64,000 nt of DNA from Haliotis rufescens (GCF_023055435.1 NW_025963902.1:7130001-7194000); one strand, 5' to 3'; counted from the stretch's first letter, positions 1,239-61,800 are shown. Translations and numbers: made by a program. Notes: generated by a model not told the origin, from the sequence alone.

Positions 1239-1306
1239 GTTTATAAATGGACTGGACTGTGACGTCGTTTGAGGGCGCTAATATAACCTTATAATGGTGT
1301 ACTTAG

Positions 1307-2270: not shown

Positions 2271-3845
2271 ATGGAAGTACAAAGCCAACCACAGAATCCT
2301 GGCTCTGTTTCTGAAACATGTGTAGTCAGTGACTGTGAGAGAGAATTGCTGGAAATTACTGACACTCAGGAAATAGGTGATCTCAAGGAACACAAAGATT
2401 GTGGTGGTCCAGAAGATCAATCAACGTCTAGTGCATGCGGGAAAACATTTATTAAATCAGAAGACATGAAAAGGCACATGGCGATTCACTGTGGAATCAA
2501 GCCTCACCAGTGCACTGTTTGTAAGAAAACATTATCAGGTCATCTGCAGAAACATATGCTGATTCACACTGGAGTCACACGTTATCAGTGTGTTGAATGT
2601 GGTAAAAGGTTTAGAGGTTCAGGACATCTGCAGGCACACATGAGGATTCACAGTGGAATTAAGCCTTATCCGTGCATTGTGTGTGAGAAGACATTTACAC
2701 AATCGGGTCAGCTGCAGTCACACATGAGGATTCACACTGGAATCAAACCTTATCAGTGTGTAGAATGTGGGAAGGAATTTACACGATCAAATTACCTGCA
2801 GATACACTTGAGGATTCACAGTGGAGTCAAGCCTAATCAGTGTAATATATGTGAGAAAACATTGACACGATTAAGTACTCTGAAGAATCACATCAGGATT
2901 CACACTGGAATCAAACTTTATCAGTGTGTTGAATGTGGGAAGGGATTTACACGATCAAATACCCTGCAGAAACACATGAGGATTCACAGTGGAGACAAGC
3001 CTTATCAGTGTAATGTATGTGAGAAAACATTTGCACGATCACGTACTCTGCAGGAACACATGATGATTCACAGTGGACTCAGACCTTATCAGTGTAATGT
3101 ATGTGAGAAAACATTTACACGATCAGGTACTCTGAAGAATCACATGGCGATTCACACTGGAATCAGACCTTATCAGTGTGTTGAATGTGGAAAAGAATTT
3201 ACAGTATCAAGTAACATGAAGAAACACATGAGGATTCACAGTGGAGTCAAGCCCTATCCATGTAATATATGTCAGAAATCATTTACACGATCAGGTACTC
3301 TGGAGAGGCACATGGCGATTCACAGTGGACTCAGACCGTATCAGTGTGTTGAATGTGGGAAAGCATTTAGACATTCATATCACCTGAAGACACACATGAT
3401 GATTCACAGTGGAATCAAGCCTCATCAGTGTGTTGAATGCGGGAAAACATTTGCACAATCAAGTAATCTGCAGAAACACATCAGAATTCACAGTGAAGTC
3501 AAGCCTTATCCGTGTAATATATGTCAGAAATCATTTACACGATCAGGTACCTTGGAGAGGCACATGGCGATTCACACTGGAATGAGACCTCATCAGTGTG
3601 TTGAATGCGGGAAAGCATTTGCACAATCAGGTAACCTGAAGACACACATGATGATTCACAGTGGAGTCAAGCCTTATCAGTGTGTTGTGTGTGATAAGTG
3701 GTTCACACACTCAAGTAGCCTGCAGAAACACATGACCATTCATAGTGCTAGCAAGCCGTATCAGTGTGATGTGTGTGGTAAAGCGTTTACATACTCAAAT
3801 AGCCTGAAGCGACACCTGACCATTCATAGTGGAAGCAAGCCTTAG
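2271..3845 (+). CDS. Multi-C2H2 zinc-finger protein, 17 fingers (first finger lacks its first Cys), no KRAB/SCAN/SET domain visible
   Basis: Track ORF 2214-3845. Splice acceptor ctcttttgttttcAG at 2241-2242, then acaATGG at 2271. Tandem CX2CX12HX3H fingers with TGxKPY-type linkers. Confidence 0.85.
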   Translation: MEVQSQPQNPGSVSETCVVSDCERELLEITDTQEIGDLKEHKDCGGPEDQSTSSACGKTFIKSEDMKRHMAIHCGIKPHQCTVCKKTLSGHLQKHMLIHTGVTRYQCVECGKRFRGSGHLQAHMRIHSGIKPYPCIVCEKTFTQSGQLQSHMRIHTGIKPYQCVECGKEFTRSNYLQIHLRIHSGVKPNQCNICEKTLTRLSTLKNHIRIHTGIKLYQCVECGKGFTRSNTLQKHMRIHSGDKPYQCNVCEKTFARSRTLQEHMMIHSGLRPYQCNVCEKTFTRSGTLKNHMAIHTGIRPYQCVECGKEFTVSSNMKKHMRIHSGVKPYPCNICQKSFTRSGTLERHMAIHSGLRPYQCVECGKAFRHSYHLKTHMMIHSGIKPHQCVECGKTFAQSSNLQKHIRIHSEVKPYPCNICQKSFTRSGTLERHMAIHTGMRPHQCVECGKAFAQSGNLKTHMMIHSGVKPYQCVVCDKWFTHSSSLQKHMTIHSASKPYQCDVCGKAFTYSNSLKRHLTIHSGSKP

Positions 3846-4022
3846 CAGTGTGTTCGATGTGGGAAAATGTTTTGACACTCAGGTACTCTGCATACACAAG
3901 TGATGATTCACAATGGAATCAAACCTTTACGAGTGCATTGTTTGTGAGAAAGGATTGACACACTCAGGTAATCTGCAGAAACACAAGGATTCGCCGTGGA
4001 ATCCAACTTATCAGTGTGTTCA
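3846..4022 (+). pseudogene. Two to three decayed zinc fingers in the 3' UTR
   Basis: The TAG stop sits where the linker Tyr codon would be. It is followed by CVRCGKMF*HSGTLHTQVMIH and CIVCEKGLTHSGNLQKH. Seen after every full exon. Confidence 0.75.
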
Positions 4023-4063
4023 ATGAAGCGAGGGATGTAACATCACACGTTTCATAGTTCAGG

Positions 4064-4069
4064 AATAAA
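4064..4069 (+). terminator. Candidate poly(A) signal of the ZF gene
   Basis: AATAAA ~220 nt after the stop codon, conserved in all units. Confidence 0.4.
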
Positions 4070-10050: not shown

Positions 10051-13042
10051 CTTTGTGGATATAGGATATGTATAACTGCCTGATATTATACATATAACTT
10101 TTGTCGGTTGTAATTACGATTTTTGCATTTTGTTTTTATCCATTAACTGTAGCAGAAACCGAGGAGGCCTCAACGGTGACTGTTTTTGTTTTTTTTCATG
10201 CGTAAAACTTACCCGCCAATAACGTCCAGCTGTACAAAAGTGATTATGGTTATTATTATCTTAATTAGTAAAACTTGCAACTAAAAATACGGTATTTTGG
10301 AAAATATCATTTCTGATAAAATAAAAATTTCAGAGTACAAGTATTCCGATCATTGCATCAAAATCCTTTCAAGTTATACGTTTTGGGGGGTATTATTAAC
10401 CGAATCACGGGTAGATTGGTAGAAAATGTACAGCTGGGTGTTATTTCCGGTTTAGTTAATGGGAAAAACACACAGCAAACCTAATTTCTGCAAATAAAAA
10501 AATGTCCAGCAGAAGAGAAAAGACAATTTAAATGGTAAATCGTCAAGTCTGGAAGTAATTTATCTCAAGTTTCCTTGACCAAAAAATTTTTATCACCTGT
10601 TTACGCTGAATTCGCTGAAGGGACTTGATGTAGTTTTTTCACTGTGCATAAGATGATGTTTCTCTTAGAAGTCGTATATCAGGCCCTCCTATGAATATGA
10701 ATGAATAATGCCCTTTCCATACAGATTATCCATGATCAGCAATAATATAGTTCAGTAATGTATTTTGTATGCATTATCGATGTATTTTGATGGGAGTCGA
10801 TTGGAAAACGTATCAGTCATAGAGCTAGATAAATTACTTCGCCCATAATTTCATTCATTGTTAACGTCTTAGAACTCAATATGTTGTATTTGCCCAGTAA
10901 TTGGTGATACTATACGGCTTATAACAAAATTATGTCAGTCGACGCAAACAGTAAGGAATTCTTCTGTGGCTGATTGGCACTTAAGCAATAATATTAATTC
11001 ATATGTATTTTATCAACATACCATTACGAGATCCCGATGCGTTTGTTTTGGCTACCAAACAGTTGCCAAGTTGCTGGGATCTGTTTGGGGGTGGGCGAGA
11101 TGTCAGGCATCTTCAGCGTGGTCGGAGACCATGCCTGACTACTGCCCATTTAATAGTCTGTGATACTGACCCTGAAACAAATATATCCAAAAAAAGCCCA
11201 AGCAAGTCTATATTAGTAGGCAAGTCTAGATTACTGCAGTTTCAGGAAATGACGAGAGTATCTTTGCTCCTTTTTATTATATTTTCTATGAACAGAACTT
11301 AACAACTGTTTGACTAGATGTTAGTCTACCCATATATTTGCTATAACTGATTTAAGAAAACACGTCTTCTACTTTTAGATAACAAATTCTGATGCTCAAT
11401 GCCATGAATTTTATGCTTAAAAATGTTAAAGTCAAGAATTCGAGTCAGACAAACCAAAAGAAACTTCTTAGCTTATCGCTCATTGGTGTATCTCCGCAAT
11501 GTCCCTCACGCTGTCTGTTTCCGGAAGAAAGTGTTCTTATGTAAGTGAGATCGGCTTCTGACGGATACAGCCGAAGTTATTCCGCTGCATTTGACCTAGT
11601 TTCCCATAGAAGCTGTGCACATATTTCGCTAATGACCGCTGTCAAATCCGATAGTGTTCTTTTTCATTCGCATAATTAATGCATTCGGTTCCAATTCAGG
11701 AGCTACCAATGCGCCTTCATTTTAACCCATTCAACGTTTTTATTCCAAATGCTTAGAGTGAGTGAGTTGGGTTCAACGCCGCTTTTAACATTATTCCAGT
11801 CATATCACGGCGTGTCAGCTTAATGTGGGAGGAAAGCCAGAAGTGATGCAGGTCTCAGACGTTTACCACTTTGGTGAAACACACGAGCACGGGTATGGTG
11901 CTGACAAACCCAGAAACATAATTGGGGCGAACCGGGATTCGAACCCACAATCATAGGTTTCTGGCGTGCCCAAGGGACGCAACTCTGCACAGCGAATCGC
12001 GGCGCCTTAGACGACTCGGCCACCCGTGCCCCCTATCCGCGGTCGAATTCAGCTAACATTGTAAGTTATCATGTAAAAAAGACAGCTCTAAATATATAAA
12101 AATACATGGTCAGTTTTAATTAATGGGTTAATGTACATTTAAAACAAAACATACAAAATTACAGCTGCCATGGGATTCATTCTGCACTGAAGGCTGCGAA
12201 AACTGCTTGTGATTTGGTATGTTTGAACCTGTATGTAGCGCGCAAAGCCGGGAAGTCATACACAAAGGCAACACTCAAGTTTAAGTGACAGTACGGCAAA
12301 GATTACAAAATGACGTCGCGAATGATATCCATGGTAGATCATTTCATAACGGCTACTTATGGTGTCTCGTTTGACAGTGATCCATTTATCCATTTAACCG
12401 CACTGACCCAATCCCTAGTTTTCTCTCCTGGAGACCAGCCTTTGGCTGCGCTTGCGAAGCACTGATACAGGCAATTCCATAACGGCGGCCTCCATGAGAC
12501 AAAGAAAAATGGCCTAGCCTATTAGCCTAATGGTTAAAGCGTTCGCTCGTCACGCCGAAGACCTGGGTTCGATTCCCGACATGGGTACAATGTGTGAAGC
12601 CCATTTCTTGTGTCCCCCGCCGTGATGTTGCTGGAATATTCCAAAAAGCGGCGTAAAACCATACTGACTCACTGTTTATAAATGGACTGGACTGTGACGT
12701 CGTTTGAGGGCGCTAATATAACCTTATAATGGTGTACTTAGAAATCAGAAGACATGAAAAGGCACATGGCGATTCACTGTGGAATCAAGCCTCACTAGTG
12801 CACTGTTTGTAAGAAAACATTATCAGGTCATCTGCAGAAACATAATTTATTTTTTTTCTGCTGATTCACACAGGAGTCAAACCTTATCAGTGTGTAGAAT
12901 GTGGGAAAGGGTTCACACAGTCAGGCAGCCTGCAGAAACACATGCATGTACACAGCAGAAGCAACCCTTATCAATGTGTAGAATGTGGGAAAGAGTTCAC
13001 ACATTCAGGTGGCCTGCAGAAACACATGATGATTCATAGTGT

Positions 13043-14983
13043 TAAGACAGCCTTGTTGGGATTCCAACGACTGTCAGGCCTCGGTTTGGGGAATTAGCTA
13101 TTGGGAGCGAGCCTTGAAACAAGAGAGAAGAGAGCTGTGAGGTCCTTAGGGTTTATTCAAGCAAGTGTCATATTATTCAAGTTACATCAATTAATATATA
13201 ATAGTGACGTACAATCATAATAATGATAATAATATGCTAACACATTGTCCATCTAATAAAGGCATAATAATAAAGGCAATGTATTTAAATTGGAGTATGT
13301 ACGGTAACATTATACAACAGATGCAGTATTTACTAGAATAATAACGGTAATGCTAAATAACATTCCTTAACAGCTAAATTGAGTAGTCGTAATATTTTAA
13401 TGGAGCATGTACGGTAGACTGCGCAAACTACTAAGATGAGGAACATGACATTTACTTATGAAAAGACGGTAAACATTAATATTTGTGGTTTCAGTAATAA
13501 TTATCACAACATAATAATTTCGGCTAATACGGAAGGTAAATACTTGATCCAAATAAAGATACGAATGTACGCGGTAGAAGATATAGCTCGGTTTTAGTTA
13601 GTGTCATTATTAGTTTTAGTAGTGATTACTTTGGTGACTACGGTAATGAATCACGGCGGCTATGTTGCTATTGACTACGCGCATTTCCTACATATATACG
13701 GAGCTATACCATAACAGCTAATGGAGTGAATACGGTAATTGTATACTTGAACGGTGCGCGTTTGAATGTACGTTATTATGAAGTATAAAAGATGACTTTT
13801 ACAGTATTTAAATGACTACGGTAATGAAATTGTGGTATAGGCTGTGTTGCAGCGTATGCAACTATATGAGGGACGGGACTCTTTACAATATATTCAAATA
13901 CTTACTTGATGAAGATAAAACCTAAGAAATATGGAATGCGTTGTTATAGCCTATGCTGTAAACGCACACGGAAGGTAAAGCTGCACATATAACCTTTGAT
14001 TGGTGGACTGTCGGAAAGTATGGAATAACCAACCTAGTAATAAATCTTGCTTGAAACAGTTGTGTTAACTCTAGGAACCGTTTTGTGACTAAGCTACATG
14101 TACGCTACGCTACTGCACGGAAATATAAACTGTATATGCATCTGGCATTTTGAACAGATGATGTTAGACATAGAAGGGGAATATAATTATGGATGTCGAA
14201 ATATAGGAGAGAACTATTGGTGCCGCATATTAATGACACATAAACTGGAGGAGCCCACGACGCATTACACTTCAAATAACACTGGGAAGTTACTGTGTAT
14301 TAAACAGTAAATAATATTTATAATGAGCAGTCATTTAGAACTTGTACACAGTAGATTGAGAGTTACAATATGGCAGTACTGATTCAACTTAACTATAACA
14401 TTTTCTAGACAATAATAACAATGAAATAAGAAGTTTAGTCATAAAATAGGAATATTTAAATGTTTCTTACCTTGAAACAAGAGAGAAGAGAGCTGTGAGG
14501 TCCTTAGGGTTTATTCAAGCAAGTGTGCTGAGGACCAACACCCAAGGAGTTATATACCCCCACAGCTCTACTCTTATCACATTAACAATTACTTTGAAGT
14601 TGTAATTTCGGTCTCTGTTATCTGCCCTGGGCTGTCAAAGTTGACTAAACAAAAGCAGGTGGTAAATAGAATGGTATCAGTATTACCTAAGAAGAGTTTA
14701 TTTTAATTACAGTTTAAGATGGTGGTCAAAACCTGCGCCAGCTGGTAACAAAACATTTATCAAGAGAACAAGGGCCGGGGCGGACGTACGCGCCGACTTT
14801 ATCTATGATTACGTAATTTACTGTTCGCGTGAATGAGCTTGCCAAGGAGCAGCCGTCATGGTCGACCAGTGGCGATAAAAACGAGAAATACTGGTCTAGC
14901 GACTTTCGAATTTTAGAATTTCCTAGTTTAAGTTTAATTTGTTAAAAATATAAAAAGTGTAATGAAATATATGCACTGTAACA
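13043..14983 (-). repeat. 3' LTR (1941 bp)
   Basis: Matches 22304-24244 at offset 9261; only two substitutions noticed by eye. Confidence 0.95.
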
Positions 14984-14993
14984 ATACCCCTGT
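14984..14993 (-). other. Short polypurine-tract-like sequence
   Basis: ACAGGGGTAT immediately precedes TGTTACA of the 3' LTR on the minus strand. Confidence 0.55.
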
Positions 14994-15955
14994 GCGTCGT
15001 GGAGCTTTTGTCCTCAAAAGCCAAAAGAAAAGGATTAAAATGAAGCGAATATACATAGATAATCAGAATACAATGATACAATAGATTACGTTGGACATGA
15101 ACAAATGTGTGCATGAAGATAGTTTGATCAGTTGAAAACATAAGGCACACGATTTCCATTACAAAGATTCTGAAACATACCTACATATTAAACTACAAGA
15201 AAAATGACAATTTGAAGTAATGAACAAGCATTTCTGTGAAAAGGAAACCGGTTAACAAGAACATACATAATATGAGGAAAGGTTGTTGTGTGATGAGGGA
15301 GTTTTTAGCGTTCCCCAACAATTTGCCCTGACACTGTCAAACATTTCACATCACGCTAGGTCTACGATTTGAAAGTATCCGTTGTGAAATATTAGGATAT
15401 AGGTGGCAAAGGGGTGCTTAAAGAGTTTGTGAATGTGTGGGAAGTGAGGCACCAGAAGGCGTTTGGATATGCCAATAGGAAGGCACAGAGTGAGTGGAAG
15501 AATTGGAATTGTGGCATACTCAAGTCTTGGAGAAGACAGTTGAGATTTTGAGACAAGGATGAGAAATGCTGCCCAAGGAACAGCCAAGATTCCTAACAGA
15601 ATGGAAACATTGTAGTCTGTTAAGGTGGTGATGACAACGAGAGATTAACGGTAGTTGACGTGTACGTATCTTAGTTAGGTATTGGAGGCAAAGCGAGGTC
15701 ACTCAGGACAGGAGGCACGAATATCAGCCGAACTCAAGGATAGTGGCTCTCCATGATGGACCAAAGACAAAAAGAAACCAAAGTACAAGTCAGATGGGAT
15801 GACCATTGTTGCAGGAAAGTTGTGGCCACAACATTTCACTGCGTAGCACTTATAGAACACAAGGCAATTTGATTACCTGTAGGGGGTGGTCAGAGCTCAT
15901 CTACCTTGACAAATGATGACTTGTTGCCAGGAGGAATAGCATGGAAGGTCAAGAC

Positions 15956-18900
15956 CTATGATTTTGCAAAATATCTGTGTTTCCGTTTCCGTCTGTGACC
16001 AGATCCTGTTCTAAATGTATGGTAATCACTTATCATTTCCGCACTAAGGTTGGAGGCAGGTTCCCAGGTGCGTTGAGGGTAACCTTCCCATTCAATTAGG
16101 TAATGAGTTACTCCTGACTTCTTTTTAGCTTTGTGTATGCGTTTTACAGCATAAAGTTGATCATCTGGTTGGGCAGATGATGTGGGACTCTGTGGAATAG
16201 TGTCAGAGTTATCAGACGAGTGAGGTAGCATAATGGGATCCTCTACGGAAGTGTGCTGTGTTGTGGTAGGGTTGTCAGGATGGGAGGATGTTGACTGAGT
16301 TGGAGTTGATTGATGCTGGGCTGTTTGTGAGGCTTCTCTACGAGGATTGTCAGGCTGGGAGGCCGTCGACTGAGTGGGTGTTGCTAGATGCTGAGCTGGT
16401 TGTGCAGGTTGTCTTCGAGGGGTTGGAGGTGTATAAGTTTTAAGTCTGTTGGCATGAATGAAGGATTTATGTTCTTTGTTTGTGTTAGTGTTCAGTAGTT
16501 TGAAAGTATGGTTAAGACCGATGCGAATGATTCTGTAAGGTCCTATCCATTTCTTTGACAGTTTGGGGGAAAGGCCAGTTTTGACAGTTGGATCAGTCAT
16601 GAGAACCTGATCACCAACTGCAAATGAAGGTTCCTTGGCTCTGACATCCTGAAGATTCTTGCTTTTATCCTGAGCAGCAGACATGTTGTCCTTTGCAAGG
16701 GATTTTGCAACATTCAGATTTTTCAAGAGATCTTGAAGATGACCCTGTGCATCTTTGCCGAGGGTAGATTTAGGCAGCAAGGTTGTGTCAAAAGGAAGAT
16801 TCATTTCCTTTCCAAACAGAAGGTAGTGTGGTGAATACCCTGTAGATTGACAAGGTACATTGCGCATGGCCATCATAACACATGGAATGAGTTTGGCCCA
16901 ATTGGTCTGATCAGGGTCAGCATATGTTCGGAGAGCCTGCTCTATGACACTGTTCCTCCTTTCACACATCCCATTAGTCTGGGGGTGGTAGGACGAAGTG
17001 TAGTAGTGCTTGATATCGAGGAGTTCACAGAGAGCATTTACTAGCTTGGAAGTGAACTGCCTACCTCTGTCAGTAAGAAGAGTACGGGGAGCACCAAACC
17101 GTGAGAAAACCTCAGTGAACAGGATTGATGCAACCTCGGAGGCTTCTTGAGTGCGCATAGGGAAACCTTCTGTCCAGCGTGAGAAGGAATCAACTGCAAG
17201 GAGAACATACTTATAACCTTCCTTAGTCTCAGGCAATGGCCCGAGGATGTCAACATGGAGACGAGAGAATGTGTCCTCAATAGGCATGGGCACCATTGGT
17301 GCTGGCTTAGCATTTGTCCTTCTTTTGGAGCGTTGGCAGTCATCACAGGACTTGACATAATTCTCAATATCCTGGTATAAGCCTGGCCAGTAATACTTTG
17401 TGAGTATTGTCTGACGAGTGGCATCTCGTCCAAGGTGGCAACCACCAGCTTTGGAATCATGGTAGGCAAAAAGAAGCTCTTTGCGACAGCAGACAGGGAC
17501 AGCTAGCTGTGTTACCATAGGAGGGCGATTGTTTTTCTGACCTCGATGCTTTGCATGATAGAAGTGGTACAGAATACCATCACGTATGTCATACTCTTGA
17601 GCAAGGCCAGTTAGACCCTTGACTTGAACATCTGTATAGGTGGAAGGAATTTCACCTTTTTCAATGTAGTCCATGATTGGACAAAGGTCAGGGGATTTAC
17701 GTTGCTTTTCTGCCAAGTCTTTATCATCAAGATCAGTTCCTATAGCAAAGACCATAGGGCCTGAAGGAGGATCGTGAGGACCCGACTTGTAGACAAAGTC
17801 TACAGATATAGAGGATGTTATGTCATCTCTACTGATATCTTCTGATGAGACACTGGGTGAGTCAAGAGTGTCATTGTCAATGTTTGTATGCTTTGGAAAG
17901 TTGTTTTGTGGAGATGAGCATGATTTGGTTGAAGAGGAAGAAGACCTCAGCTGGCTGGAGGGACGAGACATGAATGGTAGTTTGGTGTGGACACTGTTGT
18001 TGGAGGATTTTGTAGCAGTGGTGACCGACTTGTTTGTCTTCTTGTCAGTAGGTGGCATGGGACTTGGATGAGCATGGCTGGCTGGTTTGTGAGATAAGGC
18101 TGTTGAGGGTGTAGACCTCATATTGCCTGCTTTTGAATAAGCATATTGGCGAGTGAAGGAAGTCGAAGGTGTAGACCTCTTGTTGCCTGTATTGGCATTG
18201 GCATAATGGTGAGAAGTGGCAGTCGAGGGTGTAGACCTCTTGTTGCCTGTATTGGGATTGGCATAATGGAGAGAAGTGGCAGTCGAGGGTGTAGACCTCA
18301 TGTTGCCTGCATTGGGATTTGCATAATGGCGAGAAGTGGCAGTCGAGGGTGTAAACCTCATGTTGCCTGTATTGGGATTGGCATAATGGAGAGAAGTGGC
18401 AGTCGAGGGAGTAGGCCTCGTGTTGCCTTGGTGATGAGGGAATGACACTTTGGGGCTGCTTGATGGTGACATCGAATGTGAAGTTGCAGTGGGTAAGAGT
18501 GGAGATGAAGCAGTGGCAGCTACTTGTTCATATGTGCGGGTTGATGAGATGGGTTCTGTTGAAATGGGTGGGGAGGGTATATCATCAGTGTTAGGTTGAT
18601 GTACTTGCTCTGCATGAGGAATGCGAGATAAGGCATCTGCATTTGTGTTGGCTTTGCCTGGCCTGTGTATGATCTCAAAATCATACTCTTGCAGCATGAG
18701 GGACCATCTACTAAGGCGACCAGAGTCATGTTTGGTTTTCTTAAGCCAAGTCAGAGCTTTGTGGTCTGTGTAAACAGAAAATGATCCATTTGCAAGGTAC
18801 ACCCTGAAGTTTTTAATACCTTCTAGGACGGCCAGGCATTCTAGATGTGTGATACCCCAATTCTTTTCAGCAGTATGGAGAGAGCGACCACCATAACATA

Positions 18901-22102: not shown

Positions 22103-22290
22103 TACTGGGGGTTGTTGCTGGGTAAGATAAGACTGACTGTGTTGTTGCTTCTGTAGGGGACGATGGTGTCAGCAGGCATAGTGTGGTGTCAAGCTGTGGA
22201 GGTGGTGGTGGTAGTGTGGAGTCAGGTACAGGTAACGTCACAGTCTCAACTTGTAGTTCACAAGGCTGGCTCCAGGCACCGAGGATCGAA

Positions 22291-22301
22291 CGTCTCCACC
22301 A
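22291..22301 (-). other. Primer-binding site, tRNA-Ala-like
   Basis: TGGTGGAGACG two nt inside the 5' LTR, complementary to a tRNA 3' end ...TCTCCACCA of the kind typical of tRNA-Ala. The isoacceptor is inferred. Confidence 0.7.
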
Positions 22302-22303
22302 AT

Positions 22304-45077: not shown

Positions 45078-47809
45078 AAATTACCACAAACAGCTATTAT
45101 CAGTGTGTTAAATGTGGGAAAAACATGAACAAAATCAGGTCTTACATCATGATCCATAACACATCACCAACTTGTGTATAGTTTGTTTGTTGTTTAACGC
45201 CGCACTCAGCAATATTCCAGCTATATGACGGCGGTCTGTAAATAATCGAGTATGGACCAGACAATCCAGTGATTAATATCATGGGCATCGATCGATCCAC
45301 GCAATTGGGATCCATGACATGCATCAACCAAGTCAGCGAACCTGACCACCCGAACCCGTTAGTCGCCTTTTACGGCAAACATGGGTTGCTGAAGACCTAT
45401 TATACCCCGGATCTTCACGGGTCTCAGCCCTCGTTATTGTTGGTGTTCTTGTGGAAACATCTTTTGAAAATGCATTATCATGATAAAAGACAACTCTTTT
45501 GTTTTCAGTGAACACCATAACATCCACACGTTAACAATGGAAGTACAAAGCCAACCACAGAATCCTGGCTCTGTTTCTGAAACATGTGTAGTCAGTGATT
45601 GTGAGAGAGAATTGCTGGAAATTACTGACACTCAGGAAATAGGTGATCTCAAGGAACACAAAGATTGTGGTGGTCCAGAAGATCAGTCAACGTGTAGTGC
45701 ATGCGGGAAAACATTTATTAAATCAGAAGACATGAAAAGGCACATGGCGATTCACTGTGGAATCAAGCCTCACCAGTGCACTGTTTGTAAGAAAACATTA
45801 TCAGGTCATCTGCAGAAACATATGCTGATTCACACTGGAGTCAAACCTTATCAGTGTGTAGAATGTGGGAAAGGGTTCACACAGTCAGGTAGCCTGCAGA
45901 AACACATGATGATTCATAGTGGAATCAAGTCTCATCAGTGCTTCGTGTGTGAGAAAACATTTACATTATCATGTCATCTGCAGAAACATATGCTGATTCA
46001 CACTGGAATCAAACCTTATCAGTGTGTAGAATGTGGGAAAGGGTTCACACAGTCAGGCAGCCTGCAGAAACACATGAACGTACACAGTAGAAGCAACCCT
46101 TATCAATGTGTTGAATGTGGTAAAAGGTTTAGAGGTTCAGGACATCTGCAGGCACACATGAGGATTCACAGTGGAATTAAGCCTTATCCGTGCATTGTGT
46201 GTGAGAAAACATTTACACAATCGGGTCAGCTGCAGTCACACATGAGGATTCACACTGGAATCAAACCTTATCAGTGTGTTGAATGTGGGAAGGAATTTAC
46301 ACGATCAAATTACCTGCAGATATATTTGAGGATTCACAGTGGAGTCAAGCCTAATCAGTGTAATATATGTGAGAAAACATTGACACGATTAAGTACTCTG
46401 AAGAATCACATCAGGATTCACACTGGAATCAAACCTTATCACAAAATTACCACAAACAGCTATTATCAGTGTGTTAAATGTGGGAAAAACATGAACAAAA
46501 TCAGGTCTTACATCATGATCCATAACACATCACCAACTTGTGTATAGTTTGTTTGTTGTTTAACGCCGCACTCAGCAATATTCCAGCTATATGACGGCGG
46601 TCTGTAAATAATCGAGTATGGACCAGACAATCCAGTGATTAATATCATGGGCATCGATCGATCCACGCAATTGGGATCCATGACATGCATCAACCAAGTC
46701 AGCGAACCTGACCACCCGAACCCGTTAGTCGCCTTTTACGGCAAACATGGGTTGCTGAAGACCTATTATACCCCGGATCTTCACGGGTCTCAGCCCTCGT
46801 TATTGTTGGTGTTCTTGTGGAAACATCTTTTGAAAATGCATTATCATGATAAAAGACAACTCTTTTGTTTTCAGTGAACACCATAACATCCACACGTTAA
46901 CAATGGAAGTACAAAGCCAACCACAGAATTCTGGCTCTGTTTCTGAAACATGTGTAGTCAGTGATTGTGAGAGAGAATTGCTGGAAATTACTGACACTCA
47001 GGAAATAGGTGATCTCAAGGAACACAAAGATTGTGGTGGTCCAGAAGATCAGTCAACGTGTAGTGCATGCGGGAAAACATTTATTAAATCAGAAGACATG
47101 AAAAGGCACATGGCGATTCACTGTGGAATCAAGCCTCACCAGTACACTGTTTGTAAGAAAACATTATCAGGTCATCTGCAGAAACATATGCTGATTCACA
47201 CTGGAGTCAAACCTTATCAGTGTGTAGAATGTGGGAAAGGGTTCACACAGTCAGGTAGCCTGCAGAAACACATGATGATTCATAGTGGAATCAAGGCTCA
47301 TCAGTGCATCGTGTGTGAGAAAACATTTACATTATCATTTCATCTGCAGAAACATATGCTGATTCACACTGGAATCAAACCTTATCAGTGTGTAGAATGT
47401 GGGAAAGGGTTCACACAGTCAGGCAGCCTGCAGAAACACATGAACGTACACAGTAGAAGCAACCCTTATCAATGTGTTGAATGTGGTAAAAGGTTTAGAG
47501 GTTCAGGACATCTGCAGGCACACATGAGGATTCACAGTGGAATTAAGCCTTATCCGTGCATTGTGTGTGAGAAAACATTTACACAATCGGGTCAGCTGCA
47601 GTCACACATGAGGATTCACACTGGAATCAAACCTTATCAGTGTGTTGAATGTGGGAAGGAATTTACACGATCAAATTACCTGCAGATACACTTGAGGATT
47701 CACAGTGGAGTCAAGCCTAATCAGTGTAATATATGTGAGAAAACATTGACACGATTAAGTACTCTGAAGAATCACATCAGGATTCACACTGGAATCAAAC
47801 CTTATCAGT
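45078..47809 (+). repeat. 1366-bp tandem duplication (45078-46443 / 46444-47809)
   Basis: aaattaccacaaacagc recurs at offset 1366; SINE C, the acceptor and the first nine fingers are duplicated. Confidence 0.92.
45537..46547 (+). CDS. Truncated ZF copy: 9 fingers fused in frame to a relic finger
   Basis: Track ORF 45480-46547 ends ...HTGIKPYH|KITTNSYYQCVKCGKNMNKIRSYIMIH. Confidence 0.6.
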   Translation: MEVQSQPQNPGSVSETCVVSDCERELLEITDTQEIGDLKEHKDCGGPEDQSTCSACGKTFIKSEDMKRHMAIHCGIKPHQCTVCKKTLSGHLQKHMLIHTGVKPYQCVECGKGFTQSGSLQKHMMIHSGIKSHQCFVCEKTFTLSCHLQKHMLIHTGIKPYQCVECGKGFTQSGSLQKHMNVHSRSNPYQCVECGKRFRGSGHLQAHMRIHSGIKPYPCIVCEKTFTQSGQLQSHMRIHTGIKPYQCVECGKEFTRSNYLQIYLRIHSGVKPNQCNICEKTLTRLSTLKNHIRIHTGIKPYHKITTNSYYQCVKCGKNMNKIRSYIMIHNTSPTCV

Positions 47810-48225
47810 GTGTTGAATGTGGAAAAGAATTTACAGTATCAAGTAACATGAAGAAACACATGAGGATTCACAGTGGAGTCAGACCTTATCAGTGTAATAT
47901 ATGTCAGAAAACATTTACAGTATCAGGTACTCTGAAGAATCACATGGCGATTCACACTGGAATGAGACCTCATCAGTGTGTTGAATGCGGGAAAGCATTT
48001 GCACAATCAGGTAACCTGAAGACACACATGATGATTCACAGTGGAATCAAGCCTTATCAGTGTGTTGTGTGTGATAAGTGGTTCACACACTCAAGTAGCC
48101 TGCAGAAACACATGACCATTCACAGTGCTAGCAAGCCGTATCAGTGTGATGTGTGTGGTAAAGCGTTTACATACTCAAATAGCCTGAAGCGACACCTGAC
48201 CATTCATAGTGGAAGCAAGCCTTAG
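46903..48225 (+). CDS. Multi-C2H2 zinc-finger protein, 14 fingers (unit 4)
   Basis: Track ORF 46846-48225. Three extra N-proximal fingers, middle fingers missing relative to units 1-3, and Cys->Tyr in finger 2. Confidence 0.75.
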   Translation: MEVQSQPQNSGSVSETCVVSDCERELLEITDTQEIGDLKEHKDCGGPEDQSTCSACGKTFIKSEDMKRHMAIHCGIKPHQYTVCKKTLSGHLQKHMLIHTGVKPYQCVECGKGFTQSGSLQKHMMIHSGIKAHQCIVCEKTFTLSFHLQKHMLIHTGIKPYQCVECGKGFTQSGSLQKHMNVHSRSNPYQCVECGKRFRGSGHLQAHMRIHSGIKPYPCIVCEKTFTQSGQLQSHMRIHTGIKPYQCVECGKEFTRSNYLQIHLRIHSGVKPNQCNICEKTLTRLSTLKNHIRIHTGIKPYQCVECGKEFTVSSNMKKHMRIHSGVRPYQCNICQKTFTVSGTLKNHMAIHTGMRPHQCVECGKAFAQSGNLKTHMMIHSGIKPYQCVVCDKWFTHSSSLQKHMTIHSASKPYQCDVCGKAFTYSNSLKRHLTIHSGSKP

Positions 48226-55848: not shown

Positions 55849-58800
55849 GAATTCGAGTCAGACAAACCAAAAGAAACTACTTAGCTTATCGCTTATTGGT
55901 GTATCTCCGCAATGTCCCTCACGCTGTCTGTTTCCGGAAGAAAGTGTTCTTATGTAAGTGAGATCGGCTTCTGACGGATACAGCCGAAGTTATTCCGCTT
56001 CATTTGACCTAGTTTCCCATAGAAGCTGTGCACATATTTCGCTAATGACCGCTGTCAAATCCGATAGTGTTCTTTTTCATTCGCATAATTAATGCATTCG
56101 GTTCCAATTCAGGAGCTACCAATGCGCCTTCATTTTAACCCATTCAACGTTTTTATTCCAAATGCTTAGAGTGAGTGAGTGAGTGAGTGAGTTGGGTTTA
56201 ACGCCGCTTATAACATTATTCCAGTCATATCACGGCGTGTCAGCTTAAATGTGGGAGGAAAGCCCGAAGTGATGCATGCAGGTCTCAGACGTTTACCACT
56301 TTGGTGAAACCGACAAGCACGGGTATGGTGCTGACAAACCTAGAAACATAATCGGGGCGAACCGGGATTCGAACCCACAATCATAGGTTTCTTGTGTGCC
56401 CAAGGGACGCAACTCTGCACATCGAATCGCGGCGCCTTAGACGACTCGGCCACCCGTGCCCCCTATCCGCGGTCGAATTCAGCTAACATTGTAAGTAATC
56501 ATGTAAAAAAGACAGCTCTAAATATATAAAAATACATGGTCAGTTTTAATTAATGGATTGATGTACATTTAAACGAAAACATACAAAATTACAGCTGCCA
56601 TGTGATTCATTCTGCACTGAAGGCTGCGAAAACTGCTTGTGATTTGGTATGTTTGAACCTGTATGTAGCGCGCAAAGCCGGGAAGTCATACACAAAGGCA
56701 ACACTCAAATTTAAGTGACAGTACGGCAAAGATTACAAAATGACTTCGCGAATGATATCCATGGTAGATCATTTCATAACGGCTGCTTATGGAGTGGTGT
56801 CTCGTTTGACAGTGATCCATTTATCCATTTAACCGCACTGACCCAATCCCTAGTTTTCTCTCCTGGAGACCAGCCTTTGGCTCCTCTTGCGCCGCACTGA
56901 TACAGGCAATTCCATAACGGCGGCCTCCATGAGACAAAGAAAAATGGCCTAGCCTAATAGCCTAATGGTTAAAGCGTTCGCTCGTCACGCCGAAGACCTG
57001 GGTTCGATTCCCGACATGGGTACAATGTGTGAAGCCCATTTCTTGTGTCCCCCGCCGTGATGTTGCTGGAATATTCCAAAAAGCGGCGTAAAACCATACT
57101 GACTCACTGTTTATAAATGGACTGGACTGTGACGTCGTTTGAGGGCGCTAATATAACCTTATAATGGTGTACTTAGAAATCAGAAGACATGAAAAGGCAC
57201 ATGGCGATTCACTGTGGAATCAAGCCTCACCAGTGCACTGTTTGTAAGAAAACATTATCAGGTCATCTGCAGAAACATAATTTTTTTATTTTTTTATGCT
57301 GATTCACACAGGAGTCAAACCTTATCAATGTGTAGAATGTGGGAAAGGGTTCACACAGTCAGGCAGCCTGCAGAAACACATGAATGTACACAGTAGAAGC
57401 AACCCTTATAAGTGTGTAGAATGTGGGAAAGGGCTCACACAGTCAGGTAGCCTGCAGAAACACATGATGATTTATAGTGTTTATAAATTGACTGGACTGT
57501 GACGTCACACAATTCGCGAAAAATCGCGTTGAATATGGCCGTTTGAGGGCGCTAATATAACCTTATAATGGTATACTTAGAAATACTAAATAGTGTACGA
57601 AATGTGTCATTTTTCTGGGTATGAATATTCCACTGGTACGAAATGTCTGGTGTTTTCCCGCAGTACTAATTCGTTTGGGGTATGAATTTACCACAAACAG
57701 CTATTATCAGTGTGTTAAATGTGGGAAAAACATGAACAAAATCAGGTCTTACATCATGATCCATAACACATCACCAACTTGTGTATAGTTTGTTTGTTGT
57801 TTAACGCCGCACTCAGCAATATTCCAGCTATATGACGGCGGTCTGTAAATAATCGAGTATGGACCAGACAATCCAGTGATTAATATCATGGGCATCGATC
57901 GATCCACGCTATTGGGATCCATGACATGCATCAACCAAGTCAGCGAACCTGACCACCCGAACCCGTTAGTCGCCTTTTACGGCAAACATGGGTTGCTGAA
58001 GACCTATTATACCCCGGATCTTCACGGGTCTCAGCCCTCGTTATTGTTGGTGTTCTTGTGGAAACATCTTTTGAAAATGCATTATCATGATAAAAGACAA
58101 CTCTTTTGTTTTCAGTGAACACCATAACATCCACAAGTTAACAATGGAAGTACAAAGCCAACCACAGAATTCTGGTTCTGTTTCTGAAACATGTGTAGTC
58201 AGTGACTGTGAGAGAGAATTGCTGGAAATTACTGACACTCAGGAAATAGGTGATCTCAAGGAACACAAAGATTGTGGTGGTCCAGAAGATCAGTCAACGT
58301 GTAGTGGATGCGGGAAAACATTTATTAAATCAGAAGACATGAAAAGGCACATGGCGATTCACTGTGGAATCAAGCCTCACCAGTGCACTGTTTGTAAGAA
58401 AACATTATCAGGTCATCTGCAGAAACATATGCTGATTCACACTGGAGTCAAACCTTATCAGTGTGTAGAATGTGGGAAAGGGTTCACACAGTCAGGTAGC
58501 CTGCAGAAACACATGATGATTCATAGTGGAATCAAGTCTCATCAGTGCATCGTGTGTGAGAAAACATTTACATTATCATTTCATCTGCAGAAACATATGC
58601 TGATTCACACTGGAATCAAACCTTATCAGTGTGTAGAATGTGGGAAAGGGTTCACACAGTCAGGCAGCCTGCAGAAACACATGAACGTACACAGTAGAAG
58701 CAACCCTTATCAATGTGTTGAATGTGGTAAAAGGTTAAGAGGTTCAGGACATCTGCGGGCACACATGAGGATTCACACTGGAATTAAGCCTTATCCGTGC

Positions 58801-61800
58801 ATTGTGTGTGAGAAAACATTTACACAATCGGGTCAGCTGCAGTCACACATGAGGATTCACACTGGAATCAAACCTTATCAGTGTGTTGAATGTGGGAAGG
58901 AATTTACATGATCAAATTACCTGCAGATACACTTGAGGATTCACAGTGGAGTCAAGCCTAATCAGTGTAATATATGTGAGAAAACATTTACACGATTAAG
59001 TACTCTGAAGAATCACATCAGGATTCACACTGGAATCAAACCTTATCAGTGTGTTGAATGTGGGAAGGGATTTACACGATCAAATACCCTGCAGAAACAA
59101 TTGAGGATTCACAGTGGACTCAGACCTTATCAGTGTAATGTATGTGAGAAAACATTTACACGATTAAGTACTCTGAAGAATCACATGGCGATACACACTG
59201 GAATCAGACCTTATCAGTGTGTTGAATGTGGAAAAGAATTTACAGTATCAAGTAACATGAAGAAACACATGAGGATTCACAGTGGAGTCAAGCCCTATCC
59301 GTGTAATATATGTCAGAAATCATTTACACGATGTGGTACTCTGGAGAGGCACATGGCGATTCACAGTGGACTCAGACCGTATCAGTGTGTTGAATGTGGG
59401 AAAGCATTTAGACATTCATATCACCTGAAGACACACATGATGATTCACAGTGGAATCAAGCCTCATCAGTGTGTTGAATGCGGGAAAACATTTGCACAAT
59501 CAAGTAATCTGCAGAAACACATCAGAATTCACAGTGAAGTCAAGCCTTATCCGTGTAATATATGTCAGAAATCATTTACACGATCAGGTACCTTGGAGAG
59601 GCACATGGCGATTCACAGTGGACTCAGACCGTATCAGTGTGTTGAATGTAGGAAAGCATTTAGACATTCATATCACCTGAAGACACACATGATGATTCAC
59701 AGTGGAATCAAGCCTCATCAGTGTGTTGAATGCGGGAAAACATTTGCACAATCAAGTAATCTTCAGAAACACATCAGAATTCACAGTGAAGTCAAGCCTT
59801 ATCAGTGTAATATATGTGAGAAAACATTTACAGTATCAGGTACTCTGAAGAATCACATGGCGATTCACACTGGAATGAGACCTCATCAGTGTGTTGAATG
59901 CGGGAAAGCATTTGCACAATCAGGTAACCTGAAGACACACATGATGATTCACAGTGGAATCAAGCCTTATCAGTGTGTTGTGTGTGATAAGTGGTTCACA
60001 CACTCAAGTAGCCTGCAGAAACACATGACCATTCATAGTGCTAGCAAGCCGTATCAGTGTGATGTGTGTGGTAAAGCGTTTACATACTCAAATAGCCTGA
60101 AGCGACACCTGACCATTCATAGTGGAAGCAAGCCTTAGCAGTGTGTTCGATGTGGGAAAATATTTTGACACTCAGGTACTCTGCATACACAAGTGATGAT
60201 TCACAATGGAATCAAACCTTTACGAGTGCATTGTTTGTGAGAAAGGATTGACACACTCAGGTAATCTGCAGAAACACAAGGATTCGCCGTGGAATCCAAC
60301 TTATCAGTGTGTTCAATGAAGCGAGGGATGTAACATCACACGTTTCATAGTTCTGGAATAAAGGTTTACAAAGTTCATATTCTTGCTGCGTAGGGGATAT
60401 TTAAATCCAATGCTATCTATCTCGGCCGTTAATAATCCTCTGGCCATGTAGTGACCACATGTTTACACCACGTGCTCTTGGACAGGGAGGGGGCACGGGT
60501 GGCCCAGTGGTCTAAGGCGCCGCGATTCACTGTGCAGAGTTGCGCCCCTTGAGCTTGCCAGAAACCTATGACTGTGGGTTCGAATCCCGGTTCGCCCCAA
60601 TTATGTTTCTAGGTTTGTCAGCACCATACCCGTGCTCGTGGGTTTCACCGAAGTGGTAAACGCCTGAGACCTGCATCACTTCGGGCTTTCCTCCCACATT
60701 AAGCTGACACGCCGCGATATAACTGGAATATTGTTAAATGCGGCGTTAAACCCAACTCACTCACTCACTCTGAAACCACCTCCGTATTTAAGGGGTGGCA
60801 GGGCTTTGCCCGTTGACCTTGAGGCCCAGAGTTTGCCTCGTGGAGGACGTAAGCAAGTTCATATTCTTGCTGCGAAGGGGATATTTAAATCCAATGCTAT
60901 CTATCTCGGTCGTTAATAATCCTCTGGCCATGTAGTGACCACATGTTTACACCACGTGTTCTTGGACAGGGATAAATCAAAGGCTATCTTATCTTCCTTA
61001 CATGTAGTCATACAGCAACTCTGTATGTTTCAGAGTTGACCAGTAATTAGCCTGTCCAGAACAAGACAATAAACTAACTGTCATCGTCTACAACCCTGCT
61101 TTGACAAACAAGGTAGTTAGCCTGTTTAATTAGTGTGCTGATTGTTCTTATACACCACTAGACTCTTGGTCAAAAAAAGGCAATTAACATATTTGCTGTG
61201 ACCTGCAACCCGTGCCCACTTAAATTATTACTGAACCATTGTGACAAGTTCACGTAACATTAACCCGTGAAGATCCGGGGTAGAATAGGTCTCCAGCAAC
61301 CCGTGCTTGCCGTAAAAGGCGACTATGCTTGTCGTAAGAGGCGACAAACGGGATCGGGTGGTCAGGATTTGGTTGACGCATGTCATCGTGTCCCAATTGC
61401 GTGGATCGATGCTCATGATGTCAATCTCTGGATTGTCTGTTCCAGCCTCAATAATTTACAGACCGCCGTCATATAGCTGGACTATTGCTGAGTGAGGCGT
61501 TAAACAACAAACAAATAAACAAAAAATAACCACATTTTCAGTGAGACATTTTCCATTGAGTGTGAATAAGTTTTCATGGAACCATAAATTCTTTGTATGG
61601 ATTAATGTTACACTTCAAAAGTGTATCGTACGGCTGCAAAGTACGACAACACGGGGATGCCACTGTATGCTGTGGTCTAGTGGCCGGATGCAGATAGATA
61701 TCCCTGACCGCTAACCTCATCCGGTCACCGGGCGGTCACCCACAGATCACCCAGGGACTCCAGCGACCTACATACATACATACATTAATATATTGTGTCT

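What the first reader, a model, noticed from the sequence alone, without database searches (positions are those of the whole stretch)
2271..60138. KRAB-less zinc-finger gene array diversifying by whole-finger shuffling inside near-identical segmental duplicates
Seen: the flanking DNA is nearly identical across units, yet the ZF exons differ by whole 84-bp modules. Units 1-3 have 17 fingers. Units 4-5 add three fingers after finger 2 (QSGS, LS(C/F)H, QSGS). Unit 4 lacks the middle block and has a hybrid TVSGTLKN finger. Unit 5 repeats the RHSYH-AQSSN block to reach 22 fingers. Finger-to-finger differences concentrate in the recognition helix while linkers are homogenised. Known: this mode of evolution characterises PRDM9 and vertebrate KRAB-ZFP clusters, and the latter recognise transposons. 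Inference: this may be an invertebrate lineage-specific, rapidly evolving DNA-recognition repertoire, possibly for transposon surveillance, caught during birth and death.
Basis: partly seen in the sequence, partly recalled or inferred. Interest (0 to 1): 0.8.

Follow-up and report, generated by a model that had tools for sequence, protein, structure and literature searches.

The report
Abalone zinc-finger genes shuffling whole fingers
A mollusc (apparently red abalone) carries a very young tandem array of zinc-finger genes whose flanks are about 98-99% identical but whose finger counts range from 14 to 24; this is a clear invertebrate example of a known way of evolving DNA-binding proteins, and its targets are unknown.

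Summary
Five ~11.4-kb tandem units in the window, and five more just outside it, have 98.3-99.2% identical flanks. Their single coding exons hold 14, 16, 17, 22, 23 or 24 C2H2 fingers, and every length difference is a multiple of 84 bp.

- Unit 5 carries an in-frame TGA and a lost zinc ligand, so it is probably a pseudogene.
- The three "extra" fingers are ancestral. Units 1-3 lost them.
- The "hybrid" finger and the repeated block also occur in paralogs outside the window.
- A truncated sixth copy and a homogeneous 12-finger pseudo-array lie between units 3 and 4.

Gene model: a conserved splice acceptor lies 29 nt before ATG 2271, and a public database holds exactly that 524-aa protein. No KRAB, SET or ZAD domain is present. 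The protein instead starts with a ~35-aa motif found at about 70 or more gene starts in this genome and in nothing among 1.84 billion database proteins.

Selection: zinc ligands and reading frames are conserved. This array shows no excess change at DNA-contact residues (omega ~1 everywhere), but older sub-arrays of the same cluster do (about 1.4 against 0.54). Contigs of probable RNA runs cover the exon.

Transposon surveillance remains untested. This is a new member of a known kind.

The parts
2228..2242 (+). Splice acceptor of unit 1 (ctcttttgttttcag). Equivalent sites end at 24883, 36318, 46874 and 58115.
   Evidence: The sequence is shown. The motif TTT(T/A)TGTTTTCAG|TG(A/G)ACACC is kept in paralogs on contigs C124, C312 and C583, whose DNA further upstream is unrelated.
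2271..3845 (+). Unit 1 CDS: 524 aa, a 50-aa N-terminal region plus 17 finger modules. The first finger lacks its first Cys.
   Evidence: Pfam zf-C2H2 E = 4.7e-106. The ESM Atlas holds this 524-aa sequence letter for letter and does not hold the 543-aa version from ATG 2214.
3846..4069 (+). Decayed fingers after the stop codon, and AATAAA 219 nt after the stop (the same offset in all five units).
   Evidence: Read directly. ZF self-similarity extends to about 4025.
24912..26486 (+). Unit 2 CDS, 524 aa, 17 modules.
   Evidence: It differs from U1 by 1 synonymous and 2 non-synonymous changes.
36347..37921 (+). Unit 3 CDS, 524 aa, 17 modules, with the first finger intact.
   Evidence: Contigs of four probable RNA runs cover 36356-38299.
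45537..46547 (+). Truncated copy, 336 aa with 9 fingers followed by junk. It is a by-product of a 1,366-bp tandem duplication (45078-46441 against 46444-47807).
   Evidence: Self-BLAST shows 99.5% identity.
46903..48225 (+). Unit 4 CDS, 440 aa, 14 modules. Finger 2 has Tyr in place of its first Cys.
58144..60138 (+). Unit 5: 22 modules if read through. It has an in-frame TGA at 58909-58911 (CGA>TGA) and a His>Gln at a zinc ligand in finger 10. It is probably a pseudogene.
43744..44880 (+). A 5'-truncated pseudo-cassette whose QSGSLQK finger has been amplified to about 12 near-identical 84-bp copies.
   Evidence: TRF reports period 84, 11.8 copies, 97% matches at 43868-44860. Two-finger versions of the cassette lie at about 1310-1615, 12745-13040 and 35383-35690, with a one-finger remnant near 57329.
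13042..24244 (-). Young Ty3/gypsy-type LTR retrotransposon with a chromodomain, inserted just after the pseudo-cassette of unit 2. It is not part of the ZNF genes. LTRs lie at 13042-14983 and 22303-24244.
   Evidence: The LTRs differ at 2 of 1,942 positions. The site is empty in unit 1 and a 4-bp AGTG target duplication flanks the element. Pfam finds protease, RT, RNase H, integrase and chromo domains. Observed only.

Best explanation
The window is the middle of a ~120-kb, head-to-tail sub-array of 10 full-length genes and one truncated gene. That sub-array belongs to a mollusc-specific poly-C2H2 zinc-finger family of about 70 or more genes, most of them in one same-strand cluster of about 0.8 Mb.

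**Gene structure.** Each gene has one coding exon. A conserved splice acceptor lies 29 nt before the ATG, which implies an upstream non-coding exon that I did not find. The protein has a 50-aa acidic N-terminal region carrying the family's conserved motif M-E-V-Q-S-Q-P-Q-N-P-G-S-V-x-E-T-C-V-V-x-D-C-E-R-E-L-L-E. After it come 14-24 Krueppel-type fingers joined by T/S-G-x-K-P linkers. This is the build of a sequence-specific nucleic-acid binder with a long target.

**How it diversifies.** Change happens at three levels.
1. Unequal exchange between the ~11.4-kb units changes gene number.
2. In-register unequal exchange, slippage or conversion between 84-bp finger modules adds, deletes, duplicates and hybridises fingers without breaking the frame. 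The same process runs in a non-genic pseudo-cassette, so it is a mutational property of the repeat.
3. Point substitutions are filtered by selection that keeps zinc ligands and reading frames. Selection otherwise leaves this young array near omega 1. In older sub-arrays non-contact residues are constrained and contact residues are not.

Copies die by nonsense mutation, truncating duplication and ligand loss.

**Status of each step.** Shown: the structure, the register, the constraint pattern and family specificity. Supported but not proven: transcription. Inferred: DNA binding and the recombination mechanism. Speculative: the targets, including transposons.
For: - **Architecture and register.**. 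Protein lengths are 440, 496, 524, 664, 692 and 720 aa, and all differ by multiples of 28 aa.
- **Youth.** Flanks are 98.3-99.2% identical, and the start regions differ by 0.3-2.1%.
- **Extent.** There are 11 near-identical starts at C124:7.110-7.228 Mb. About 70 or more motif-bearing starts lie on C124 (6.45-7.26 Mb, all + strand), C312, C512 and C583.
- **Same mode elsewhere.** One older sub-array of 10 paralogs has 9 to 20 fingers with repeated blocks.
- **Hybrid modules.** U5 finger 10 has the G helix with the H linker, so breakpoints can lie inside modules and still keep register.
- **Mutational process.** The QSGS pseudo-array has 11.8 copies at 97% matches.
- **Constraint.** Zinc ligands take 1 of 65 non-synonymous changes, against about 10.3 expected (p = 1.8e-4). 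There are no out-of-frame indels, against about 10.8 expected from the flank indel-to-mismatch ratio (p = 2e-5). The U1-3 exons differ by 0.2-0.4%, against 1.0-1.6% in the flanks.
- **Contact residues in older sub-arrays.** 48 N/9 S against 123 N/62 S. Ligands show 0 N/6 S.
- **Gene model.**
- **Transcription.** In four runs from three studies, contigs cover the exon and at least 350 nt after the stop. Depth is 0 on non-repeat parts of the same duplicated unit and close to 0 on the pseudo-cassette.
- **No accessory domain.**
- **Motif has no outside relative.**
Against: - **RNA evidence is weak.** The four runs are only guessed to be RNA and are kept as contigs. They show no strand, no ends and no splice joint into the exon. 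With 11 near-identical copies I cannot say which genes are expressed.
- **Upstream exon not located.** Comparison with distant paralogs found only repeats and about 80-190 bp of conserved sequence directly upstream of the acceptor. A promoter just upstream, with no intron, is therefore not strictly excluded.
- **Neutrality in this array.** Omega ~1 across non-ligand positions fits relaxed constraint on redundant new copies as well as diversifying selection.
- **Counting method.** The spanning-tree counts ignore gene conversion, and at looser thresholds they may join non-orthologous modules. Omega at contact residues in the older sub-arrays is not significantly above 1.
- **Assembly not checked.** Copy number and order were not tested against long reads.
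- **Binding not measured.** No DNA binding or target is known.
Confidence: 0.8

Rival explanations
1. Transposon-surveillance repertoire. The proteins bind lineage-specific transposons and recruit silencing through the conserved N-terminal motif. Finger shuffling would then be driven by an arms race, as in KRAB-ZFPs and zebrafish FiNZ-ZNFs.
For: - ZNF ORF number tracks transposon number across metazoans, and molluscs reach upward of a thousand poly-ZNF ORFs. FiNZ-ZNFs repress young transposons without a KRAB domain (PMC10547256).
- The family has its own conserved N-terminal motif.
- Contact residues evolve about 2.7 times faster than other positions relative to synonymous change in older sub-arrays.
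- The genome has young, apparently intact LTR elements, one of them inside this array.
Against: - No target is known and no binding motif was predicted or matched to a transposon.
- This array shows no excess change at contact residues.
- The N-terminal region is predicted with low confidence (pLDDT 54, one possible helix) and has no known partner.
- The retroelement insertion says nothing about targeting.
- Finger gain and loss also happens in a non-genic cassette, so it needs no selective driver.
Confidence: 0.25
2. Neutral amplification. The 120-kb sub-array is a recent segmental amplification of one functional ZNF gene. Most copies are redundant, under relaxed constraint and on the way to pseudogenes, and the finger shuffling is mutational noise of an 84-bp minisatellite.
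For: - Omega is about 0.96 overall, and about 1.2 at non-contact, non-ligand positions, in this array. It is 0.54 in older sub-arrays.
- One of the five in-window full-length units has a stop and a lost His. U1, U2 and U4 each have a lost Cys in finger 1 or 2. One copy is truncated.
- The QSGS pseudo-array shows the same instability without a gene.
Against: - Nine of 10 full-length ORFs are intact over 1.3-2.2 kb.
- There are no frameshifts where about 11 are expected.
- Ligand codons are spared (p = 1.8e-4).
- The U1-3 exons are 3-5 times less diverged than their flanks.
- The exon appears to be transcribed.
Confidence: 0.3
3. Assembly artefact. The near-identical units are mis-assembled haplotypes or over-expanded repeats.
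For: The units are 98-99% identical, which is a hard case for assemblers. No long-read check could be run because the single read-laying run went to the RNA question.
Against: - Each unit has private substitutions, indels and its own finger architecture.
- One unit alone carries an LTR element with a target-site duplication, while its neighbours have the empty site.
- The array continues outside the window with further distinct architectures.
- DNA runs of several studies hold 56-72% of the words of a 6-kb stretch.
Confidence: 0.04

Closest known systems
Vertebrate KRAB zinc-finger gene clusters (for example primate KZNFs, PMC3126818; mouse KZFP clusters, PMC5363842)
   Same: Both are tandem same-strand clusters of young paralogs with all fingers in one 3' exon. 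Both gain, lose and duplicate whole fingers in the 84-bp register, turn over by birth and death, and (in the older sub-arrays here) change fastest at contact residues.
   Different: There is no KRAB domain, either in the gene or as a significant match anywhere in the genome. No TRIM28-type partner is known. The N-terminus is an unrelated ~35-aa motif, and the coding sequence lies in a single exon.
Cyprinid FiNZ-ZNFs (Wells et al. 2023, PMC10547256)
   Same: Both are KRAB-less, lineage-restricted poly-ZNF families defined by their own short N-terminal sequence. Both are amplified into large clusters and carry signs of selection at contact residues.
   Different: The N-terminal motif is not homologous to FiNZ: a profile search of 1.84 billion proteins found nothing. 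The family is much smaller, about 70 or more genes against about 700. No expression timing or knock-down data exist.
PRDM9 zinc-finger minisatellite (Oliver et al. 2009, PMC2779102)
   Same: Both have a highly homogeneous 84-bp coding repeat that changes finger number and order by in-register exchange, with diversity greatest at positions -1, +2, +3 and +6.
   Different: There is no PR/SET or KRAB-related domain. The nearest SET matches on this contig lie 1.4 Mb or more from the window. This is a multi-gene array, not a single hypervariable locus, and allelic variation was not examined.
Cephalopod C2H2 expansions (PMC12513265; PMC9068888)
   Same: Both are large, clade-specific C2H2 expansions in molluscs, partly tandem.
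   Different: This is a different class (gastropod) and a different family. The papers I read do not describe finger-level shuffling among near-identical units or this N-terminal motif.

Membership tests
Krueppel-type poly-C2H2 zinc-finger proteins | Tandem C-X2-C-X12-H-X3-H fingers with a 28-aa period and TGEKP-like linkers | tested here: met
   There are 102 canonical fingers spaced 84 bp apart. Pfam zf-C2H2 scores E = 4.7e-106 and zf-H2C2_2 scores E = 2e-131. The linker consensus is S/T-G-x-K/R-P.
KRAB-ZFP | N-terminal KRAB domain (PF01352) | tested here: not met
   The ORF and its N-terminus give no Pfam KRAB hit. A six-frame search of the whole 1.33-Gb genome scored 11 candidates and none was significant. 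The tool warns that this does not prove absence.
KRAB-ZFP | Repression of transposons through TRIM28/KAP1 | not testable with these tools
   No binding or functional data are available.
PRDM9-like | PR/SET domain upstream of the finger array | tested here: not met
   None of the 64 SET matches in the genome lies in C124:6.4-7.3 Mb. The C124 hits are at 0.03, 5.68 and 13.9 Mb. The public 524-aa model has no such domain.
ZAD-ZNF (arthropod) | N-terminal zf-AD domain (PF07776) | tested here: not met
   The genome has only three weak matches, on other contigs, and the ORF has none.
FiNZ-ZNF (cyprinid) | FiNZ N-terminal sequence | tested here: not met
   A profile of the N-terminal 50 positions found only two hits at E ~3e-4 among 1.84 billion representatives, and both were unrelated repeat proteins. 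Any homology to a fish N-terminal domain should have appeared. I did not compare directly with a FiNZ sequence.
Ty3/gypsy LTR retrotransposon with chromodomain (the inserted element only) | LTR pair, target-site duplication, and gag plus protease-RT-RNase H-integrase-chromodomain | tested here: met
   The 1,942-bp LTRs differ at 2 positions and an AGTG duplication flanks the element. The Pfam domains occur in that order.

The most novel reading that the evidence does not exclude
The family-specific N-terminal motif may be an independently evolved effector module, a molluscan counterpart of KRAB or FiNZ. A sister subfamily on contig C583 has it as a tandemly repeated ~24-aa unit. If it recruits chromatin silencers, this about-70-gene family would be a separate origin of zinc-finger-based transposon control. 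Whole-finger shuffling in ~1%-diverged paralogs would then be its way of making new specificities.
Probability: 0.15. Interest if true: 0.75.

Novelty: new member of a known kind. Interest (0 to 1): 0.42.

Why it matters
Large lineage-specific poly-ZNF expansions are known across animals, and a link to transposons has been proposed for all of them (PMC10547256). Functional work exists only for vertebrates.

This abalone array is an unusually clean natural experiment. Ten paralogs differ by about 1-2% in surrounding DNA yet have seven finger architectures, so individual gain, loss, duplication and hybrid events can be read directly. Mutational input can also be separated from selection: the pseudo-cassette shows the raw process, and the genes show what selection keeps.

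The conserved N-terminal motif, which has no relatives outside this genome, gives a concrete handle for pull-downs or reporter repression assays. These could test whether molluscs have their own ZNF effector system.

The finding does not change any concept. It adds a well-resolved gastropod case and a candidate motif.

Tried and rejected
- **Upstream coding exon or accessory domain.** BLAST of the 9.9-kb intergenic stretch against 7 kb upstream of seven distant paralogs found only interspersed repeats, finger fragments and the proximal ~80-190 bp. The three other ORFs of 75 aa or more had no Pfam domain, apart from the finger cassette. Rfam found nothing in 26487-38300.\n- **The 543-aa ORF from ATG 2214 as the protein.** I rejected this. 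That ATG lies in the polypyrimidine tract of a conserved acceptor, and only the 524-aa form is on public record.\n- **Splice evidence from reads.** The contigs start at 36356 or later and show no joint into the exon. The N-terminal region search gave 5 hits, all through the fingers. The second Atlas call failed for the 543-aa form.\n- **tRNA origin of the unit's SINE-like repeats.** ARAGORN found no tRNA, so I make no such claim.\n- **An ungapped comparison of upstream sequence.** It is invalid because of indels, and I ignore it.\n- **Steps not taken.** I built no spliced or joined model because the CDS lies in one exon. The LTR element was only observed: I made no consensus and no repair.


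Full report
**1. What is there**

The window is G000:C124:7130001-7194000 of a 1.33-Gb, 615-contig assembly. Self-BLAST shows tandem units of about 11.4 kb. ATG-to-ATG spacings are 11,435-11,438 bp for U1-U2-U3, once a retroelement is subtracted. U3 to U4 is 10,556 bp and U4 to U5 is 11,241 bp.

Long + strand ORFs full of C2H2 fingers lie at 2214-3845, 24855-26486, 36290-37921, 46846-48225 and 58087-60138. The last is split by a stop. A truncated ORF lies at 45480-46547 and a homogeneous finger ORF at 43744-44880. A regex scan finds 102 canonical fingers, all on the + strand, with 84-bp spacing inside each array. Pfam sees only C2H2-type families.

**2. Check of the observation**

I cut each exon into 84-bp modules and labelled each module by its helix.

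| Copy | Module order | Modules |
|---|---|---|
| U1, U2, U3 | A B C D E F G H I J K L M K N O P | 17 |
| U4 | A B Q U Q C D E F J V N O P | 14 |
| U5 | A B Q U Q W D X F G F J Y L M K L M V N O P | 22 |
| Truncated copy | A B Q R Q C D E F, then junk | 9 + junk |

The 1.86 kb after the stop is 98.3-99.2% identical among all five units, and U1 and U2 flanks are 98.8% identical over 7.6 kb.

I fetched the five neighbouring paralogs outside the window. They have 16, 24, 16, 22 and 23 modules. All 11 copies differ by only 0.3-2.1% over the 762 bp around the start. All protein lengths (440, 496, 524, 664, 692 and 720 aa) differ by multiples of 28 aa.

**3. Corrections**

- U5 has TGA at 58909-58911 where every other copy has CGA. 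Its finger 10 has Gln for the first zinc-binding His. As assembled it encodes 255 aa.
- The Q-R/U-Q block after finger 2 occurs, whole or as Q-R/e, in 7 of 10 full-length paralogs and in the truncated copy. B followed by Q also occurs in the pseudo-cassette upstream of every unit. U1-3 form a clade, so one 252-bp deletion in their ancestor is the simplest history.
- The TVSGTLKN finger occurs in U4, U5, L002 and L004, with a one-residue variant in L005. The K-L-M-K-L-M repeat occurs in U5, L002 and L004.
- Some breakpoints lie inside modules. U5 finger 10 joins the G helix to the H linker, and the next finger has the I backbone with an F-type helix. Register is still kept.
- The truncated copy arises from a 1,366-bp tandem duplication (99.5% identical).
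- The 43.7-kb ORF is a 5'-truncated cassette whose QSGS finger has been amplified to 11.8 copies at 97% matches. This was also noted by the scan as s1-816510.
- At least two decayed fingers follow each stop codon.

**4. Gene model**

The ATG at 2214 sits inside ctcttttgttttcag|TG, a textbook acceptor ending at 2242. The same TTT(T/A)TGTTTTCAG|TG(A/G)ACACC... motif, followed 29 nt later by a Kozak-like A(C/T)(A/G)ATGG, is kept in paralogs on C124, C312 and C583. In two of those paralogs the sequence right up to the tract is unrelated, being a SINE tail in one and an (AAT)n run in the other. Changes in the 28 nt between the acceptor and the ATG are mostly non-synonymous in the open frame, which fits a 5' UTR.

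The ESM Atlas holds the 524-aa protein from ATG 2271 letter for letter and not the 543-aa form. AATAAA lies 219 nt after the stop in all five units. I could not locate the presumed non-coding upstream exon.

**5. Accessory domains and family**

No KRAB, SET, ZAD or other Pfam domain occurs in the ORF, its N-terminus or the other intergenic ORFs. The genome-wide KRAB search found no significant match, with the tool's caveat that this does not prove absence. SET and ZAD matches lie elsewhere.

The proteins share a conserved N-terminal motif, with M1, Q4, Q6, Q8, S12, T16, V18, D21, C22 and E28 invariant in eight diverse paralogs. A profile of it finds 124 matches in this genome. About 70 of them are full gene starts: C124:6.447-7.264 Mb (all + strand), C312:0.94-1.065 Mb, C512:2.55-2.59 Mb and C583:48.56-48.72 Mb. 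On C583, positions 13-35 are tandemly repeated.

Among 1.84 billion cluster representatives the profile finds only two hits at E ~3e-4, and both are unrelated repeat proteins. The word-indexed search found nothing through the N-terminus. AlphaFold gives pLDDT 54 with one possible helix at 15-40. This looks like a short motif in a disordered acidic region, not a folded domain.

**6. Organism**

The assembly has no COX1. The inserted retroelement's RT-RNase H region is 75% identical to a Haliotis rufescens protein, and the next named relatives are bivalve proteins at 55-59%. Earlier follow-ups of this scan (for example s1-813579) call the genome red abalone. I take that as likely but only partly verified.

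**7. Selection**

I clustered the 75 distinct modules of the 10 paralogs at <=6 differences and counted changes on minimum spanning trees.

| Positions | N | S | omega |
|---|---|---|---|
| All | 65 | 17 | ~0.96 |
| Contact (-1, +2, +3, +6) | 11 | 3 | 1.05 |
| All other positions | 54 | 14 | 0.95 |

Contact positions show no enrichment (p = 0.29). The genes are nevertheless not decaying freely:
- The four zinc ligands take 1 non-synonymous change, and that one is in U5, against about 10.3 expected (p = 1.8e-4).
- There are no out-of-frame indels, against about 10.8 expected from the flank ratio of 10 gaps to 76 mismatches (p = 2e-5).
- The U1-3 exons differ by 0.2-0.4%, against 1.0-1.6% in the flanks.

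I then fetched 20 paralogs from older sub-arrays of the same cluster. They show the same block-wise variation; one sub-array of 10 has 9 to 20 fingers. At <=6 differences per module:

| Positions | N | S | omega |
|---|---|---|---|
| Contact | 48 | 9 | 1.44 |
| Other non-ligand | 123 | 62 | 0.54 |
| Ligands | 0 | 6 | 0 |

The contrast is significant (Fisher p = 0.012), and 48 of 171 non-synonymous changes fall at contact positions against 16.7% expected (p = 1.3e-4). It holds at thresholds of 4 and 8.

The family therefore shows the classical pattern, while the very young array in the window sits near neutrality outside its structural residues. Three caveats apply. Gene conversion is ignored. 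Looser thresholds can link non-orthologous modules. Contact omega is not significantly above 1.

Among all module types, -1, +3 and +6 are the three most variable columns (2.59-2.68 bits; +3 ties with a hairpin column) and +2 ranks seventh at 2.05 bits. Hairpin positions, +9 and the middle linker residue are close behind. Linker codons mostly show low synonymous diversity.

**8. Expression**

One run search and one read-laying run were allowed. Four runs guessed to be RNA, from three studies and two species labels, have contigs that tile 36356-38299. This covers the exon and at least 350 nt after the stop, at word depths of roughly 5-400. Non-repeat parts of the same duplicated unit have depth 0, and the pseudo-cassette has 0-12.

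Low-coverage DNA would cover the whole multi-copy unit evenly, so transcription of at least some members is the better reading. The runs are contigs, so strand, ends and level are unknown. No splice joint was seen.

**9. Surroundings**

An 11.2-kb Ty3/gypsy-type element with a chromodomain lies at 13042-24244 on the minus strand, just after the pseudo-cassette of unit 2. Its LTRs differ at 2 of 1,942 positions. The site is empty in unit 1 and an AGTG duplication flanks the element. The gag and pol frames are open.

It is younger than the U1/U2 duplication, where divergence is about 1%. It interrupts no ZNF gene and is no evidence for or against transposon targeting. I only observed it.

**10. 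Comparison and verdict**

The array works like vertebrate KRAB-ZFP clusters, cyprinid FiNZ-ZNFs and the PRDM9 minisatellite in how it evolves. It fails the defining-domain test for each of them. It is a Krueppel-type poly-C2H2 family with its own N-terminal motif.

Wells et al. 2023 (PMC10547256) already report very large poly-ZNF complements in molluscs and propose a metazoan-wide link to transposons. Cephalopod expansions are also described (PMC12513265). I found no paper on an abalone family.

This is a new member of a known kind. The transposon role is open.

Noticed in passing
window 13042-24244 (minus strand): A young LTR retrotransposon whose pol ORF (1,634 aa) holds a tandemly repeated Ser/Thr/Pro-rich stretch of about 20 aa (STPSTATS.HYANPN.GN, about five copies) between RNase H and integrase. 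The 3' end of its gag ORF (21311-22102) is low-complexity Pro/Gln-rich sequence. Low-complexity ORFs on both strands overlap 20827-21567.
   Followed up: partly
window 43868-44860: An 84-bp repeat of 11.8 copies at 97% matches, encoding near-identical QSGSLQK fingers. It grew out of the two-finger pseudo-cassette found upstream of every unit. It has an open frame but lacks the family's acceptor, ATG and N-terminus. The scan also noted it as s1-816510.
   Followed up: partly
window 1240-1310 and 1607-1710 (and equivalents in other units): The finger pseudo-cassette is bracketed by a direct repeat of about 70-100 bp (GTTTATAAAT.GACTGGACTGTGACGTC...GAGGGCGCTAATATAACCTTATAATGGT.TACTTAGAAAT). The fragment may have been inserted or duplicated through that sequence.
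   Followed up: no
G000:C583:48.56-48.72 Mb (locus L010:7101-7400): A sister subfamily, on both strands, in which the ~24-aa core of the N-terminal motif (V.DC.RELLETGDLK...) is itself tandemly repeated many times before the fingers.
   Followed up: partly
G000:C334:5.75-5.93 Mb and G000:C57:5.36-5.51 Mb: Clusters of SET-domain matches, several of them with internal stops. One zinc-finger match (C57:5366690) lies inside the C57 cluster. This may be a PRDM-like or SET-gene tandem family.
   Followed up: no
window 34300-34700, 35100-35320, 35990-36233 and 32500-32690: Interspersed repeats with very high word depth (10^5) in all four laid runs. Copies occur in both orientations throughout the ZNF cluster. 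One sits inside the otherwise conserved ~190 bp upstream of the splice acceptor. ARAGORN finds no tRNA-like gene in window 1-13000, which holds copies of these repeats.
   Followed up: partly
locus L014 (G000:C124:6872327 region): A paralog whose family ATG is changed (ATAAGGAAAG in place of ATAATGGAAG), although an 883-aa frame stays open. It either uses another start or is a recent casualty.
   Followed up: no
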